Shown in pieces: positions 35,196-45,773 of a stretch of DNA of 64,000 nt; position 1 is the stretch's first letter; the number at the start of each line of letters is the position of its first letter. The stretch covers positions 124,001 to 188,000 of the IMG/VR virus record IMGVR_UViG_3300034101_004588; one strand, written 5' to 3'. A model generated the notes under the pieces. It ran no database searches, was not told the origin of the DNA, and saw only the letters and a program-made list of their open reading frames with translations. Made by a program: the position numbers and the translations under genes.

Positions 35196-35203
35196 AAAAG
35201 ATT

Positions 35204-35294
35204 TGTGCTGTTATGGGTTCTGCCCTTTACTTACGTATGGTGACCCTACCACGTAGACCAATGCCAAGGGTTATTAGGTTCTTAACCACAGCAC
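35204..35294 (-). ncRNA. tRNA-like RNA of unknown identity
   Basis: acceptor-like GTGCTGT/ACAGCAC+A, D-like arm, long hairpin, GGGCAGAACCC; no proper anticodon arm. Confidence 0.45.
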
Positions 35295-35298
35295 AAAA

Positions 35299-36426: not shown

Positions 36427-36530
36427 GAAAGAGTGAGACGTTTACCCGCGACGTCTCAGGATCAATCTTAACTCTTCCTAGAGAGAACCCTGGAAAAAGA
36501 ATGTCGGCTCCATTTACAAGATTAACCCAA
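36427..36530 (-). ncRNA. candidate structured RNA upstream of tRNA-Ala
   Basis: 11-bp helix 36518-36528/36459-36469 and 8-bp hairpin TGAGACGT/ACGTCTCA. Confidence 0.35.
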
Positions 36531-36535
36531 TTGTT

Positions 36536-36643
36536 TTACTTTACGGTGCAAACAGTCGTCTTACCACTTGGTTTACATTCTTTTTTTGATGCACATGCGG
36601 TAAGGGTCATAATTGCCACGATTGTTAGAATAATGTATTTCAT
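36536..36643 (-). CDS. 35-aa lipoprotein (not in ORF track)
   Basis: MKYIILTIVAIMTLTAC-ASKKECKPSGKTTVCTVK; LTAC lipobox; upstream TTGATA-16-TATAAT and TAAATA. Confidence 0.65.
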   Translation of the reverse strand: MKYIILTIVAIMTLTACASKKECKPSGKTTVCTVK

Positions 36644-36686
36644 AGAATCTTTATTATAATACTTTTATTTATAATATCAACTGTTG

Positions 36687-37157: not shown

Positions 37158-37228
37158 TCCCTCCTCAAGGTACTGCCCCTTGTTCTATCGGTTATCAACC
37201 GATTGTAATGCTACTATACTAAAGAGGG
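37158..37228 (-). tRNA. tRNA-Ile(GAT), non-canonical T-loop
   Basis: ATCGG-TTGATAA-CCGAT; T-loop GGCAGTA. Confidence 0.85.
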
Positions 37229-37230
37229 GA

Positions 37231-37350
37231 AGGGCGTGTTTTTGTCCCGGAAACCGAAGGCGTCCCAACTTAATGTGTACCGGTTTTGTTATCACGCTAA
37301 TCACCCGATTGGTGCGCATCAACATCATTGAGAGGCGTTCCGGGTCTACT
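37231..37350 (-). ncRNA. candidate late-expressed structured RNA (about 110 nt)
   Basis: closing helix CCCGGAA/TTCCGGG, GC-rich; TAAATA at 37355-37360 just upstream. Confidence 0.45.
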
Positions 37351-37369
37351 ATAATATTTAGTTAGTATT

Positions 37370-37580
37370 TGAAGAGTTTTGCTCCGGAAATTGTCTCTTC
37401 TTCAACGAGACCGGGCATGGAGCCCGGAATCATCCGTCTAGCCTGTATTGAATCTAATGCATGGAGTCATAGTTTTACGCAGCCTGACTCGTCCAGCAAC
37501 AGTAAGAAAGTCCCAACACACTAACAGGCAAAGACTATCTTACCTGGATCTGGTTTATTTGCTGCTGCCAGATCCGTTAT
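37370..37580 (-). ncRNA. candidate multi-pseudoknot ncRNA (about 210 nt)
   Basis: seven helices found by eye, two of them pseudoknots; upstream TTGCAA-16-TAGTAT. Confidence 0.55.
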
Positions 37581-37620
37581 CTTTATACTATAGCAATATT
37601 TTATATTTGCAAATAGAAAA

Positions 37621-37697
37621 TGGAGTATCGGGTCAGACTTGCACTGACTAATGAAAGTTTTGCAGACTATCGCTTCGACTACTTTAGCTTCCGATAC
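37621..37697 (-). tRNA. tRNA-Cys(GCA), T-loop TGCAAGT
   Basis: loop CTGCAAA, U73, CCA. Confidence 0.85.
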
Positions 37698-37783: not shown

Positions 37784-37854
37784 TGCGAGTACTCGGTAAT
37801 GCTCCGAGGCCTAAAACTTGGCAAGCTTCCGTTCTACTATTAAACTATACCCGC
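37784..37854 (-). tRNA. tRNA-Gly(GCC), non-canonical T-loop
   Basis: loop TTGCCAA; T-loop AGCATTA. Confidence 0.85.
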
Positions 37855-37942
37855 TTAAATTATATACACCTCTGAGTTACCTCACCCACGGAATTCACGG
37901 TGGTTGTTTTGGTGATTCAGGTTCACCTCCCATAAAACCTTT

Positions 37943-37986
37943 AAAATTAAAAACCCGCTTTCCATTTTATTGGAATAAGCGGGTTT
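37943..37986 (-). terminator. intrinsic terminator of the putative attenuator
   Basis: AAACCCGCT-TATTCCA-ATAAAA-TGGAA-AGCGGGTTT followed by TTAATTTT. Confidence 0.75.
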
Positions 37987-38013
37987 AGTTGACAATAAAA
38001 ATGTACAAACCCG

Positions 38014-38082
38014 CTAGACACTCCAACAAAGTCTTCGTGGACTTGTTGAAATTGCATTGCTGGTTGTTGTATGAATTTTCAT
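38014..38082 (-). CDS. 22-aa leader peptide MKIHTTTSNAISTSPRRLCWSV (not in ORF track)
   Basis: stop codon overlaps AGCGGGTTT, which is complementary to the terminator 5' arm; TAAATA at 38095-38100. Confidence 0.65.
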   Translation of the reverse strand: MKIHTTTSNAISTSPRRLCWSV

Positions 38083-38466: not shown

Positions 38467-38496
38467 ATTATTATTTATAGTAAAATAGAAAGGAAG

Positions 38497-38952
38497 AGGA
38501 GATGAGGGGACTCGAACCCCTGTCCAAATACTTTACACTAAAAGGTCTACATGTTTAAGTGTCTTTAGCATTTCAGCCACCATACGGTGACGAAGACTTT
38601 AGGCTGCTTGGCGACACTAACCGAGTTTTTAGTCTGCCTATAGACATTACCGCACATCTACAAACGGAGGATTCTTTTTGTTACGTTGATACAGTCCACA
38701 ATTCAACTACCTCTGCATATCAATATAACCTTAGAGGATCTGGTTATAAGGACCTTAGGCTGCTAAGAGATACTCTTCTTCAACACCACCGAGGAACTCG
38801 GAAGCATTGTTGAAGATATACTCGGCTTCAGCCAAGATAGCATCAGTATTATCTTCTGCTTTTAGTTTTTTGATCTGCTTTTTACGAGGCCAGCTGATCA
38901 ACCTCGACATGCACTCTTAGTTTCAACTATTTGTCGAAACCAGTACATCCCC
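38497..38952 (-). ncRNA. ssrA: tmRNA
   Basis: 5' GGGGATGTACTGGTTTCGAC, 3' GGTTCGAGTCCCCTCATCTCC with G3-U70; tag ORF 38859-38755 ending LLAA*. Confidence 0.93.
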
Positions 38953-38965
38953 GAATTTTCAAAGA

Positions 38966-39730
38966 TCAAACTTCCATTGAAGGTATTGAATGTCCACCCA
39001 TAGGATTGCTTGTCGCTTCCTGTGGTTTTGGAGCACCTGCTACTTCGTATATAGATTTTCTAACACTATCTAAATCTGTAATAAAATAATCTGTTCCGTT
39101 TATATTAATAGCTGCAATACTGTCTATGCTAATAATTCTTGGTTCTATTCCTTTTTCCACTCCTTGATAAGATGCTGAACCTTTAGAAGGAGATTTATAT
39201 TGAGATACTTCATCTTTATTGGTTACTTCAAAGTCTGAAGATGAATTGGGATTTTCTTTATTAGCTTTAACCAACACTGGTGAAAAACTAGCAGATATAG
39301 CAACCGGAAGATACCGTAAATAAATCTGTCCTTCTTTTTGGCGCAAAGAGGTACTACCTTCTACATCATCATAAACACTTTTTTGAGCAACAAAATCTGT
39401 TGTTTTTCCTTCTCTTTCTCTTTGACGATTAACAGCTGCTGTATAATCAAAACCAATTTGTCCATTGACTTGAGATACTTTAGCAAAATATGCTTTACCA
39501 TGTTTTAAACCCGGCAAAACAAATGAAGGAGAAGGTGCTTTGTTGCTAGACTCTCTAGTAACTTGAGTAACACTAAAGAAGTTAGTTCCTTTGTGTTTTT
39601 GTTCTACCTCTTTAATAATATTAATCAATTCTGATTTAGTGATATTACCTTGCTTTTCTGGTGTTGATGATATGCCGTAAGCCATTTCGTTGTATACCCT
39701 TTCTAGTAGTATGTGATCTTTATTTTTCAT
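38966..39730 (-). CDS. hypothetical late protein with KDHILLE leader
   Basis: MKNKDHILLERVYNE; upstream TAAGTA. Confidence 0.6.
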   Translation of the reverse strand: MKNKDHILLERVYNEMAYGISSTPEKQGNITKSELINIIKEVEQKHKGTNFFSVTQVTRESSNKAPSPSFVLPGLKHGKAYFAKVSQVNGQIGFDYTAAVNRQREREGKTTDFVAQKSVYDDVEGSTSLRQKEGQIYLRYLPVAISASFSPVLVKANKENPNSSSDFEVTNKDEVSQYKSPSKGSASYQGVEKGIEPRIISIDSIAAININGTDYFITDLDSVRKSIYEVAGAPKPQEATSNPMGGHSIPSMEV

Positions 39731-44186: not shown

Positions 44187-45773
44187 TTATCTGCTAATCT
44201 CTTCCCAGTCCAAGGAACCATATACATCATCTCCATCACCATTAGATGCCATAACAAGTGATAATTCAAAAGGAGTACCCGTTAATCCGTTTCGTTCTAG
44301 TTGAAACTTAAAAATAGCTTCTTTAAGAATGTCTATTTGTCCTTTAGCAAAGTTATTAGTAATAAAATAACCACTTGCTAAAATTCTTCCTTCTGAAATC
44401 CCTGTGCCTGTTAAATTATATTCAACAGCACTATCTACTCCTGCACTCAACCATGTTCCTCCCGTTGTAGTAGTATTTGATCTTATCTGCCAATTGTATA
44501 CACCATCACTTGAACCTATAACAGAAATTGCTGTAGGTACTACAATAGCATCTAGACTGTCTGTTCTCAATTTTAAAGAGACAACAGGGTAGTAAGTTCC
44601 TGCTGTGGTTAATTCTTTTCCTCCTCCTGTGATTGCAGTTCCCACGGCTTGTTGCAACCCTCTAAGTTCATACCCTCCTTCTGAAATTACACTGGAACAT
44701 ATTTGTTTCAATGTATTAGAGCCATTTGTGGCTGCTTTGTTGACGATCTCATATCTCAGAGGCAATGAAGCTGTGGTGATGTAAGTTGAATCGATAAGAT
44801 TAGCATGATGGAATGAATGACAAACAATAAACTGACCATTAATTACAAATCCTGTTCTTGCTGTTCCTACACCAAGCCATTCAATATCCATCCAAAAAAT
44901 TTGAGCCTTGGTTATATCTAAAACTATACCAGAGGCTCCAGTTCCATCCAATTTGTCTCCGTTCCAATTAGATCGAAGAACTACGGTATCCACAACGGAA
45001 CCTGATATAAAAGATCTTTTAACCAGACCAATATTATCATCATCTAACTGGAAATAAAATCCATTTTGACTTCCGAAATACCCCACTCTTTGTCTTAAAT
45101 TTGTGGTAGAAGAAGCCATGACAAAAGTATTCATGACTAGCAAAGACTTGCCTGGTTGATAAGCAAATACTTTTGTTGTTTCTCTAATTGCACTAGCTCC
45201 TGACGCATTGGTGACATTTAACTGCATCAATCCCTGTGATGCGTTGAATGAAACTGAACCTCCATTTGCTGATAATGTAGCCCAAAGATTATTATCTTTG
45301 TAACGATGTGAAGAATCAAACAAAGTCATAGGGGTAGACATTCTCAATCTTCCAAAAGCATCAAGCTGTGTTGGTTCTGGTCTTGTTATACTTGTTACGG
45401 TATTTGTAACTTTAACATTTAAAGAAGATGTTGGTGCAAAAACTGTAGCAAAATTTCCATCTTTATCACCAATGGTAATATCATCAACAGATGATTCTAA
45501 ATCTTGGGATAAAACTCTTAATGCATTTAATCCATCAGATGTTGTTACATCGGCTCTTAAATTTGAATTCCAATCTTTGATTTCGACTGCACCTATATCA
45601 ACATTTCCAGCAGATAGTGAAATAGTTAAATCATCAAAATTTGTTATATAAGACGCCTGTGCAAACAAATCACGATTTGCATTGTTTCCTACTTCTACCC
45701 AAGAATTGTTGTATCCGACATTACAATTTATAGGAGCAGATGAAACTGTATTTACTAAACTATATGACATCAA
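44187..45773 (-). CDS. putative virion structural protein
   Basis: LDAFGRLR...YQPGKSLL...QRVGYF...DIEWLGVG...SLPLRYEI. Confidence 0.65.
   Translation of the reverse strand: MMSYSLVNTVSSAPINCNVGYNNSWVEVGNNANRDLFAQASYITNFDDLTISLSAGNVDIGAVEIKDWNSNLRADVTTSDGLNALRVLSQDLESSVDDITIGDKDGNFATVFAPTSSLNVKVTNTVTSITRPEPTQLDAFGRLRMSTPMTLFDSSHRYKDNNLWATLSANGGSVSFNASQGLMQLNVTNASGASAIRETTKVFAYQPGKSLLVMNTFVMASSTTNLRQRVGYFGSQNGFYFQLDDDNIGLVKRSFISGSVVDTVVLRSNWNGDKLDGTGASGIVLDITKAQIFWMDIEWLGVGTARTGFVINGQFIVCHSFHHANLIDSTYITTASLPLRYEIVNKAATNGSNTLKQICSSVISEGGYELRGLQQAVGTAITGGGKELTTAGTYYPVVSLKLRTDSLDAIVVPTAISVIGSSDGVYNWQIRSNTTTTGGTWLSAGVDSAVEYNLTGTGISEGRILASGYFITNNFAKGQIDILKEAIFKFQLERNGLTGTPFELSLVMASNGDGDDVYGSLDWEEISR

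What the first reader, a model, noticed from the sequence alone, without database searches (positions are those of the whole stretch)
37370..37612. Unannotated roughly 210-nt RNA with two predicted pseudoknots inside the tRNA array
Seen (minus strand, GC-rich in an AT-rich context, no credible ORF): 8-bp helix 37575-37568/37553-37546 whose loop CAGCAGCA (37567-37560) pairs with TGTTGCTG (37501-37494); an 11-bp helix with one mismatch 37543-37533/37512-37502 whose loop GCCTGT (37529-37524) pairs with ACAGGC (37446-37441); and further hairpins GAGTCA/TGACTC, CCGGGC/GCCCGG and GTCTC/GAGAC. A sigma70-like promoter TTGCAA-16-TAGTAT lies at 37612-37585. Established: large ornate ncRNAs of unknown function (GOLLD, ROOL) and T4 RNA C/D occur beside phage tRNA genes. 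I cannot assign this one to a known family.
Basis: partly seen in the sequence, partly recalled or inferred. Interest (0 to 1): 0.75.

Follow-up and report, generated by a model that had tools for sequence, protein, structure and literature searches.

The report
New phage RNA with self-pairing loop
The flagged stretch encodes a real, expressed, about 200-base structured RNA of a previously uncatalogued family found in lake-water phages, and it carries a conserved loop that appears built to pair with a second copy of itself; what it does is still unknown.

Summary
Window 37363-37577 (minus strand) is one member of an RNA family with no Rfam match. I found at least 39 distinct members, all in uncultured phage or lake-metagenome contigs. 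None is in 185,579 prokaryote species genomes or in GenBank phage isolates.

Comparative analysis supports helices H1 and H2, one pseudoknot (GCCUGU with ACAGGC, 95% paired, compensatory changes) and helices H4, H5 and H6.

The most telling feature is an almost invariant 18-nt loop on H6. Its central hexamer is always UCCGGA or UCUAGA. It switched between the two at least six times with no intermediate, which points to loop-loop pairing between two copies (a kissing dimer).

Relatives have a sigma70-type promoter just upstream, or sit directly behind a tRNA. Their 3' neighbours vary: a variant twister ribozyme, an abiF-like hairpin (as here) or a tRNA.

Freshwater metatranscriptome contigs cover this RNA only, and end inside the H6 loop.

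Best reading: a stable, trans-acting, self-associating phage RNA, a small analogue of ROOL/GOLLD. Its cellular role is unknown. An RNase P RNA reading was tested and rejected.

The parts
37585..37612 (-). Promoter-like element: TTGCAA-16-TAGTAT, or alternatively an extended -10 TGcTATAGT at 37587-37595. The predicted start is about 37578-37580.
   Evidence: Sequence. It scores 8 of 12, below the scan threshold. TTGACA-17-TAnnnT lies at the same position, 2-8 nt before H1, in L133, L130, L129, L136, L143, L140, L201, L169 and L197.
37363..37577 (-). The RNA itself ('module A'), 215 nt as modelled. The stable species may be about 195 nt, ending near 37382-37385.
   Evidence: Covariance model R1 scores 193.7 bits, E 2e-47. 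It is single-copy in the 211-kb phage. Metatranscriptome contigs cover only 37382-37562.
37546..37575 (-). H1 hairpin: 37568-37575 pairs with 37546-37553, with a 14-nt loop. It is peripheral and absent in minimal members (L138, L137).
   Evidence: 83% paired, and 8 of 8 pairs show both-side changes. An unbiased helix scan also recovers it.
37502..37543 (-). H2 two-part stem: 37538-37543 with 37502-37507, and 37531-37536 with 37509-37514. Its loop carries the 5' strand of the pseudoknot.
   Evidence: The outer part is 80% paired with 5 of 5 pairs compensatory. The inner part is 57% paired, where the alignment is shifted by indels. By eye GUAAGA/UCUUAC becomes GAUAAA/UUUAUC in L007.
37524..37529 (-). 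Pseudoknot 5' strand, GCCUGU, in the H2 loop.
   Evidence: Pairs with 37441-37446. 94.6% paired. Variants are GCC/GGC, GCU/AGC and GUC/GAC. L118 has AGGUUAG/CUAACCU and L137 has GUCGA/UCGAC. It is the top hit of the unbiased covariation scan.
37441..37446 (-). Pseudoknot 3' strand, ACAGGC.
   Evidence: Same evidence as the 5' strand.
37464..37490 (-). H3 hairpin, GAGUCA/UGACUC. It is variable and absent in minimal members.
   Evidence: 70% paired and partly conserved.
37405..37437 (-). H4 (37434-37437 with 37405-37408) enclosing the H5 hairpin (37422-37427 with 37411-37416, loop UCCAU).
   Evidence: H4 is 82% paired, with G-U, G-C and A-U alternatives. H5 becomes CUGGC/GCCGG or UCUGC/GCGGA in relatives.
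37371..37400 (-). H6 hairpin (37395-37400 with 37371-37376) with an 18-nt near-invariant loop at 37377-37394.
   Evidence: 94.4% paired, and all 6 pairs are compensatory. Loop variants are listed.
37383..37388 (-). Palindromic hexamer UCCGGA in the H6 loop, the proposed kissing-dimer contact.
   Evidence: 24 members have UCCGGA and 15 have UCUAGA, none of the 39 has anything else, although the search pattern allowed four combinations. There are at least 6 independent CG/UA switches on a tree built without the loop.
37494..37501 (-). Not supported as a conserved pairing.
   Evidence: 52% paired against 40-45% in slid controls. L126 has two breaking changes.
37303..37344 (-). Adjacent 'module B', an abiF-motif-like hairpin. 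It is not part of module A.
   Evidence: RF03085 scores 19.9 bits here, 35.3 bits in L126 and 29.8 bits in L084. The gathering score is 37. The inner 3-bp stem covaries: CGC/GCG, AGC/GCU and UGC/GCA.
37229..37300 (-). Adjacent 'module C', a conserved structured stretch before the tRNA-Ile-like gene.
   Evidence: Conserved in L126 and L150. It has GCGUG/CACGC, and CCGG/CCGG becomes CCAG/CUGG.
37624..37697 (-). Upstream flanking tRNA-Cys(GCA).
   Evidence: Rfam tRNA, 42.4 bits.
37158..37228 (-). Downstream flanking tRNA-like gene (anticodon GAU) with an unusual T-loop.
   Evidence: Rfam tRNA, 43.6 bits. ARAGORN does not call it.

Best explanation
Window 37363-37577 (minus strand) is the gene for a stable, trans-acting, non-coding phage RNA of a new family.

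Shown:
- It is conserved in sequence and structure in at least 39 distinct phage or lake-metagenome sequences.
- It folds into a core made of H2, an H-type pseudoknot (H2 loop with a segment 80 nt downstream), a small H4/H5 junction and hairpin H6.
- H6 presents an 18-nt almost invariant loop whose central hexamer is always self-complementary.
- RNA of this family is present in freshwater metatranscriptomes.

Inferred:
- It is made either from its own sigma70-type (host RNA polymerase) promoter, as here, or cut out of tRNA-array transcripts. The cutting would be done by the tRNA-processing enzymes on the 5' side and by a flanking twister-type ribozyme, hairpin or tRNA on the 3' side.
- Two copies pair loop to loop through the hexamer, giving a kissing homodimer or a larger closed assembly.
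- The assembled RNA acts as a particle or decoy that binds a host or phage factor connected with tRNA or RNA metabolism. In this it would resemble the much larger ROOL and GOLLD RNAs, which are also encoded next to phage tRNA islands.

The cellular target is not known.
For: - No Rfam family matches.
- Homologs came from blastn, a pattern scan and covariance model R1.
- On 39 sequences, 75.9% of cells are paired against 61% in shuffles (0 of 500 shuffles reach this) and 40-45% in slid controls. The pseudoknot is 94.6% paired and H6 is 94.4% paired, both with many both-side changes.
- An unbiased scan for covarying helices returns H1, the pseudoknot and H6.
- The loop hexamer is UCCGGA in 24 members and UCUAGA in 15 of the 39 members, with no half-changed form (the only half-changed sequence is a marginal hit, L216, E 8e-4, left out of the 39), although the pattern allowed one. 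There are at least 6 independent double switches. Adjacent bases cannot pair within one molecule, so this fits pairing between two copies.
- The setting is an independent gene: promoters lie directly upstream in many members, the RNA directly follows a tRNA in others, and the 3' neighbours vary.
- Metatranscriptome contigs from three runs cover 37382-37562 and nothing on the flanks. One relative reaches word depth 671.
- Precedent: ROOL and GOLLD are phage or prophage RNAs near tRNA islands that assemble through kissing loops with conserved intermolecular covariation (PMC12286853). RNAs under 200 nt can also form cages (bioRxiv 10.64898/2026.07.01.735769).
Against: - Dimerisation is inferred from covariation alone. 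No structure prediction or experiment was possible, because the complex predictor refuses RNA-only jobs.
- A dimeric protein, or a DNA-level reader of the palindrome, would give the same pattern.
- The invariance of the rest of the loop is partly circular, because most homologs were found with a pattern built on that loop.
- The metatranscriptome contigs end inside the H6 loop (37382-37385). If that is the mature 3' end, H6 and an intact loop would not exist in the stable species.
- No function, partner or phenotype is known, and no cultured phage carries the RNA.
Confidence: 0.5

Rival explanations
1. Self-processing RNA. Module A is a new self-cleaving ribozyme, or a dimer-dependent nuclease substrate, that is cut inside the H6 loop. 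The conserved core would be the catalytic or recognition fold, and the palindrome would bring two copies together for cleavage in trans, as in the Varkud satellite ribozyme dimer.
For: - Contigs from three independent metatranscriptomes stop at 37385 or 37382-37384. In two of them sequencing adapters abut that end.
- One 216-nt contig (word depth 671) carries 197 nt of RNA sequence. That matches the distance from the predicted transcription start to the loop.
- The G-A step at the putative cut is invariant in the family.
- A cut after the fourth base on both strands of a UCCGGA duplex would leave 2-nt 3' overhangs, which is RNase III geometry (inference).
Against: - The ends come from assembled contigs, not reads. 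PCR duplicates or branching of the assembly graph could create them.
- The position is uncertain by 1-3 nt.
- No known ribozyme family matches.
- The strong covariation of the H6 stem, including its 3' strand, shows that the full hairpin is selected.
Confidence: 0.15
2. Protein-binding RNA. The palindromic loop is the binding site of a symmetric dimeric protein, from the host or the phage, and the RNA acts as a sponge or scaffold without RNA-RNA pairing.
For: - A palindrome that stays a palindrome also fits symmetric protein recognition.
- The A-rich flanks (ACAA..., ...AAAA) resemble sites for single-strand RNA binders (my own knowledge).
- The neighbouring module resembles the abiF motif, which works by binding a protein (PMC12373285).
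Against: - Protein sites rarely tolerate a clean CG to UA double swap at the centre with no single-change forms.
- No protein gene co-occurs consistently. DUF6891 genes lie next to the RNA in two divergent loci but are absent from five complete carrier phages.
Confidence: 0.15
3. Cis-acting leader or riboswitch that controls what lies downstream.
For: In a few members an ORF starts 20-60 nt after the RNA: the L199/L139/L160 group, L195 and L187.
Against: - Here and in most members the next feature is another RNA module, a tRNA or a fresh promoter, not an ORF.
- There is no terminator or anti-terminator.
- The downstream genes are unrelated to one another.
Confidence: 0.05
4. Minimised phage RNase P RNA lacking the specificity domain.
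For: From memory of E. coli M1 RNA, there are short resemblances: UCCGGGCUCCAU, CCGGAGCAA and AGACCCGGAA.
Against: - RF00010 and RF02357 give no match.
- Homologs do not keep the would-be P4 and P5 pairings.
- CCGGAGCAA lies in the H6 loop.
Confidence: 0.01

Closest known systems
ROOL (RF03087) and GOLLD (RF01998) RNAs
   Same: They are encoded by phages and prophages, often beside tRNA islands. Their function is unknown. They are pseudoknotted, they self-assemble through kissing loops, and the intermolecular contacts are conserved by covariation (PMC12286853).
   Different: They are 3-4 times larger (about 580 and over 800 nt). There is no sequence or structure match here. Assembly of this RNA is inferred, not shown.
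Phage T4 rnaC / rnaD (species 1 and 2 stable RNAs)
   Same: They are small stable RNAs of unknown function at the end of a T4-type tRNA cluster, cut out of the tRNA precursor transcript (annotation, and my own knowledge).
   Different: There is no similarity. Model R1 scores nothing on the T4 rnaC/rnaD region. T4 rnaC ends in a tRNA-like T-arm, which this RNA lacks.
HIV-1 dimerisation initiation site and phi29 packaging RNA (loop-loop multimerisation)
   Same: A six-base self-complementary sequence sits in a purine-flanked hairpin loop. In HIV-1 it has two natural variants, GCGCGC and GUGCAC (my own knowledge). Here the two variants are UCCGGA and UCUAGA.
   Different: The RNAs and their biology are unrelated. 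The resemblance is one of mechanism only.
manA RNA motif of T4-like cyanophages
   Same: It is a short (under 200 nt) phage-associated RNA, now reported to form RNA-only cages (bioRxiv 10.64898/2026.07.01.735769).
   Different: It is a different fold and is in Rfam. There is no match here.
abiF motif RNA (RF03085), relevant to the neighbouring module B only
   Same: Module B has the same hairpin plan and the same CCUCUCA loop start. Relatives reach 29.8 and 35.3 bits. In bacteria the motif binds and neutralises the AbiF toxin (PMC12373285, PMC12737573).
   Different: All copies score below the gathering score of 37, and the window copy scores only 19.9 bits. The phage has no Abi_2 gene.

Membership tests
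Any Rfam 15 family (4227 models, including GOLLD, ROOL, HEARO, OLE, raiA, glmS, 6S, Y RNA, pRNA and the self-cleaving ribozymes) | A covariance-model score at or above the family's gathering score. | tested here: not met
   No match to 37363-37623 even at E<=10. The only match in the 395-nt gap is abiF at 37303-37344, 19.9 bits.
Bacterial RNase P RNA (RF00010) and type T (RF02357) | A model match and a conserved long-range P4 helix with its flanking conserved nucleotides. | tested here: not met
   No match. The candidate P4 (UUCCGGG/CCCGGAA) and P5 pairings are not kept in L082 or L007.
T4 rnaC / rnaD | Sequence or structure similarity to the T4 RNAs, and a tRNA-like 3' domain. | tested here: not met
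   R1 with filters off finds nothing on T4 70908-71171. This RNA has no T-arm-like element.
ROOL/GOLLD-like self-assembling phage RNAs (a functional kind, not a homology family) | Encoded by phages next to tRNA genes. | tested here: met
   It lies in tRNA or tmRNA arrays in the window and in most relatives.
ROOL/GOLLD-like self-assembling phage RNAs (a functional kind, not a homology family) | Conserved intermolecular base pairing. | tested here: inconclusive
   The self-complementary hexamer is kept through at least 6 double switches. Physical assembly could not be tested.
abiF motif (module B, 37303-37344) | Score of at least 37 bits, a 6-bp outer stem, a one-base bulge, a 3-bp inner stem and a CUCUCA loop start. 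| tested here: inconclusive
   The window scores 19.9 bits with a 4-5 bp outer stem. L126 scores 35.3 and L084 29.8. The inner stem covaries and the loop start is conserved.
abiF motif (module B, 37303-37344) | Placed next to a gene for an Abi_2/AbiF protein. | tested here: not met
   There is no PF07751 match in the 211-kb phage.

The most novel reading that the evidence does not exclude
The RNA is a new kind of self-processing, RNA-only dimer. Two copies kiss through the palindromic loop and are cut there, either by the RNA itself or by a duplex-specific nuclease. This yields the roughly 195-nt species seen in metatranscriptomes. Together with the neighbouring AbiF-antitoxin-like hairpin and the twister variants, it would form part of a modular cassette of phage counter-defence RNAs embedded in tRNA arrays.
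Probability: 0.12. Interest if true: 0.9.

Novelty: new member of a known kind. Interest (0 to 1): 0.72.

Why it matters
Orphan structured RNAs beside phage tRNA genes (GOLLD, ROOL, T4 RNA C/D) have no known function despite decades of work. This family is far smaller than ROOL or GOLLD, at about 200 nt with a minimal form of about 150 nt, so it is easier to study. It has a clean, testable prediction: a six-base kissing contact that can be broken and then restored. It is abundant enough to assemble from lake metatranscriptomes. It also comes with informative neighbours, namely a twister variant that could set its 3' end and an AbiF-antitoxin-like hairpin. It could therefore become a workable model for what these tRNA-island RNAs do, and it hints that such islands hold interchangeable RNA modules, some aimed at host RNA-based defences.

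Tried and rejected
- **RNase P RNA idea.** It came from remembered M1 motifs and was rejected by Rfam and by homologs.
- **Exact pattern of the RNase-P-like motifs in viral contigs.** No hits.
- **Neighbouring protein 38966-39730 as a synteny anchor.** No relatives found.
- **blastn of the region and of two relatives against GenBank phages.** No match.
- **Single-sequence folding.** Not informative, z about -1.4.
- **RegB endonuclease as the source of the GG/AG end.** No RegB gene was detected, but the control search was uninformative. Most family members also lack GGAG.
- **DUF6891 as a partner protein.** It is adjacent in two divergent loci but absent from five complete carrier phages.
- **Bacterial genome copies.** There were 27 pattern hits, and all were chance (10-15 bits). 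The best was L231 at 19.6 bits, which lies in a coding region and has a non-palindromic UCCAGA.
- **Permissive all-against-all covariation scan.** Too noisy. It was replaced by a stricter helix scan, which found no further tertiary helix.
- **Literature searches.** They found no description of this RNA.

Full report
**Context.** The window is bases 124001-188000 of a 211-kb, 99% complete IMG/VR virus record. Its structural protein at 44187-45773 is about 60% identical to those of T4-like cyanomyoviruses. The phage has no psbA gene, and the DNA is found in lake-water metagenomes. It is therefore a freshwater T4-like phage of an unknown, probably heterotrophic, host. The window carries about 25 tRNA genes and a tmRNA gene at 38494-38952, all on the minus strand. 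The finding lies in a 395-nt gap between tRNA-Cys (37624-37697) and an unusual tRNA-Ile-like gene (37158-37228).

**Observation.** The stretch is GC-rich (0.41-0.51) in a 0.16-0.3 background and holds only short ORFs, at most 27 codons on the minus strand and 67 on the plus strand. Thermodynamic folding of the single sequence is not better than shuffles (z = -1.3 and -1.5). The case therefore rests on comparison with other sequences.

**Known families.** Rfam 15 gives no match to the RNA at gathering thresholds or at E<=10. I noticed short resemblances to E. coli RNase P RNA and tested them. The RNase P models do not match. The homologs found later do not keep the required P4 and P5 pairings. 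I rejected that idea.

**Homologs.**
- blastn of the gap against the whole records of 16 related phages gave weak hits (68-73% identity) in three of them.
- By eye these already showed compensatory changes.
- A pattern built on the most conserved hairpin loop was validated on held loci. It then found 28 viral stretches and 81 metagenome stretches.
- A covariance model (R1), built from 12 sequences (A2), separates true members (24-197 bits) from chance hits.
- In all there are 39 distinct members in alignment A5.
- The same pattern in 185,579 prokaryote species genomes gave only chance hits.
- blastn against 50,697 GenBank phage records gave nothing.
- The RNA is single-copy in this phage.
- In 47 related records searched with the model alone, every hit also carried the loop pattern. 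The pattern therefore did not obviously miss loop-divergent members within the model's reach.

**Structure.** The numbers below are from the 39 sequences.

| Element | Cells paired | Pairs with compensatory (both-side) changes |
|---|---|---|
| Whole structure | 75.9% (shuffles 61%, 0 of 500 reach it; slid controls 40-45%) | 44 of 53 |
| H1 | 83% | 8 of 8 |
| H2, outer part | 80% | 5 of 5 |
| Pseudoknot GCCUGU:ACAGGC | 94.6% | CG to UA at two pairs, in 9 and 14 sequences |
| H4 | 82% | 1 of 4; the outer pairs mainly alternate G-U/G-C and A-U/G-U |
| H6 | 94.4% | 6 of 6 |

- Two minimal members keep the pseudoknot with quite different sequences: AGGUUAG/CUAACCU in L118 and GUCGA/UCGAC in L137.
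- An unbiased search for covarying stacked pairs returns only H1, the pseudoknot and H6.
- The GTCTC/GAGAC hairpin is replaced by H4 plus H6.
- H1 and H3 are missing in the minimal members.
- The conserved core is therefore H2, the pseudoknot, H4/H5 and H6.
- G-U pairs in the stems fix the minus strand as the folded strand.

**The H6 loop.** The 18-nt loop reads ACAA-nn-UC-YR-GA-nn-AAAA. Its invariance is partly imposed by my search pattern. The central YR was free to take four values, yet 24 members have CG and 15 have UA, so the hexamer is always UCCGGA or UCUAGA. The only exception is the weakest, doubtful hit, L216. On a tree built without the loop columns, the two states changed at least six times. 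Two adjacent bases cannot pair with each other in one molecule. A coupled change that preserves self-complementarity is what loop-loop pairing between two identical RNAs predicts. A symmetric protein reader is the main alternative.

**Gene organisation.**
- Many members have TTGACA-17-TAnnnT directly upstream, placing the start 2-8 nt before H1. The window's TTGCAA-16-TAGTAT (or the extended -10 TGcTATAGT) lies at the same place, though it scores only 8 of 12.
- In other members the RNA starts 7 nt after a tRNA, or follows other structured modules.
- On the 3' side the neighbours differ:
  - a variant twister ribozyme in about 13 distinct members;
  - an abiF-like hairpin in the window, L126, L151 and L150;
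  - a tRNA, a new promoter or an ORF in the rest.
- The RNA is thus an autonomous module, not a leader of a particular gene.

**Expression.** Contigs of three freshwater metatranscriptomes lie on 37382-37562 only. There is no coverage of the promoter, of modules B and C, or of the neighbouring tRNA-like genes. Some contigs are identical over 45-57 nt and others are relatives. In two runs with different library chemistries, adapter sequence abuts the low-coordinate end at 37385 and at 37382-37384. A third run's contig also ends at 37385. One 216-nt contig (word depth 671) holds 197 nt of RNA sequence, equal to the distance from the predicted start to the loop. This suggests a discrete species of about 195 nt ending inside the palindromic loop. 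These are assembled contigs, so duplicates or graph breaks cannot be excluded, and the strand was not measured directly.

**Interpretation.** The most likely reading is a stable, trans-acting phage RNA that self-associates through its loop. It would be a small analogue of ROOL and GOLLD, which share the tRNA-island setting and the kissing-loop assembly (PMC12286853). The end inside the loop keeps alive a more unusual reading, cleavage at the dimer contact, either self-catalysed or by a duplex-specific nuclease. Riboswitch and RNase P readings are unlikely or refuted. T4 rnaC and rnaD are analogous in position only.

**Side findings.**
- *Module B (37303-37344)* resembles the abiF motif, an RNA that binds and neutralises the AbiF HEPN toxin (PMC12373285, PMC12737573). 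Relatives reach 35.3 and 29.8 bits against a threshold of 37, and the inner stem covaries. The phage has no Abi_2 gene. A phage-borne antitoxin mimic is a reasonable but untested idea.
- *The twister variants.* They keep P1. They covary in P2 (UGC/GCA against UAC/GUA) and in P4 (CCG/CGG, CAC/GUG, ACC/GGU, UAG/CUA). They also differ from the canonical ribozyme by changes that I read as compensating in the two pseudoknots, UCUC with GAGA and AC with GU. That partner assignment rests partly on my memory of the twister fold.

Noticed in passing
window 37303-37344 (-); L126:1729-1764; L084:1512-1590: An abiF-motif-like hairpin lies directly 3' of the RNA. RF03085 scores 19.9, 35.3 and 29.8 bits against a gathering score of 37. 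The inner stem covaries (CGC/GCG, AGC/GCU, UGC/GCA). The phage has no Abi_2 gene, so it could be a phage-borne mimic of the AbiF RNA antitoxin.
   Followed up: partly
window 37229-37300 (-): A further conserved structured stretch ('module C') lies before the tRNA-Ile-like gene. It has GCGUG/CACGC and CCGG/CCGG stems, and the latter becomes CCAG/CUGG in L126 and L150. There is no Rfam match.
   Followed up: partly
L123:1720-1789, L124:1421-1490, L082:1624-1721 and about 10 more loci: A variant twister ribozyme follows the RNA (or a tRNA) in many relatives. It scores 28-32 bits against a gathering score of 67. It has an invariant GUCUCAAGUC loop and AGAGAG, covariation in P2 and P4, and apparent compensating changes in both pseudoknots. 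It would cut about 10-20 nt after H6. None is present in this phage.
   Followed up: partly
window 37784-37854 (-) and 37158-37228 (-): Two tRNA-like genes (anticodons GCC and GAU) have non-canonical T-loops (GCAUUAC, GCAGUAC). The Rfam model finds them (52.2 and 43.6 bits) but ARAGORN misses them. The second one is conserved in L126.
   Followed up: no
window 37328-37355 (+): A near-consensus sigma70-like site, TTGAGA-16-TATAAT (11 of 12), lies on the plus strand and points antisense into the RNA. It overlaps the 5' half of the abiF-like hairpin. It may be a by-product of that sequence.
   Followed up: no
window 38494-38952 (-): A phage tmRNA gene (135 bits) with a 161-nt insertion relative to the model. 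Relatives also carry tmRNA next to the RNA modules.
   Followed up: no
window 37855-38060, 36427-36685, 35196-35298: Other GC-rich stretches inside the tRNA array have no tRNA or Rfam assignment and no convincing ORF. They may be further RNA modules.
   Followed up: no
L084:1400-2120 and L085 (minus strand, about 1170-1720): In two related phages a region of about 700 nt with no Rfam match other than abiF runs from a TTGACA-17-TATAGT promoter up to the tmRNA gene. It contains an abiF-like hairpin with a 47-nt insertion.
   Followed up: partly
L195:2402-2791 and L169:2934-3389: DUF6891 genes lie beside the RNA in two divergent, non-T4-like contigs, but are absent from five complete carrier phages.
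   Followed up: partly
upstream of the RNA in the L124/L131/L152/L210 and L122/L125/L149 groups: Other conserved short RNA-like modules precede the RNA in relatives, for example ones ending in ...UUCUAGUCAUA or ...GGCCAGUAAUCA. Their nature is unknown.
   Followed up: no
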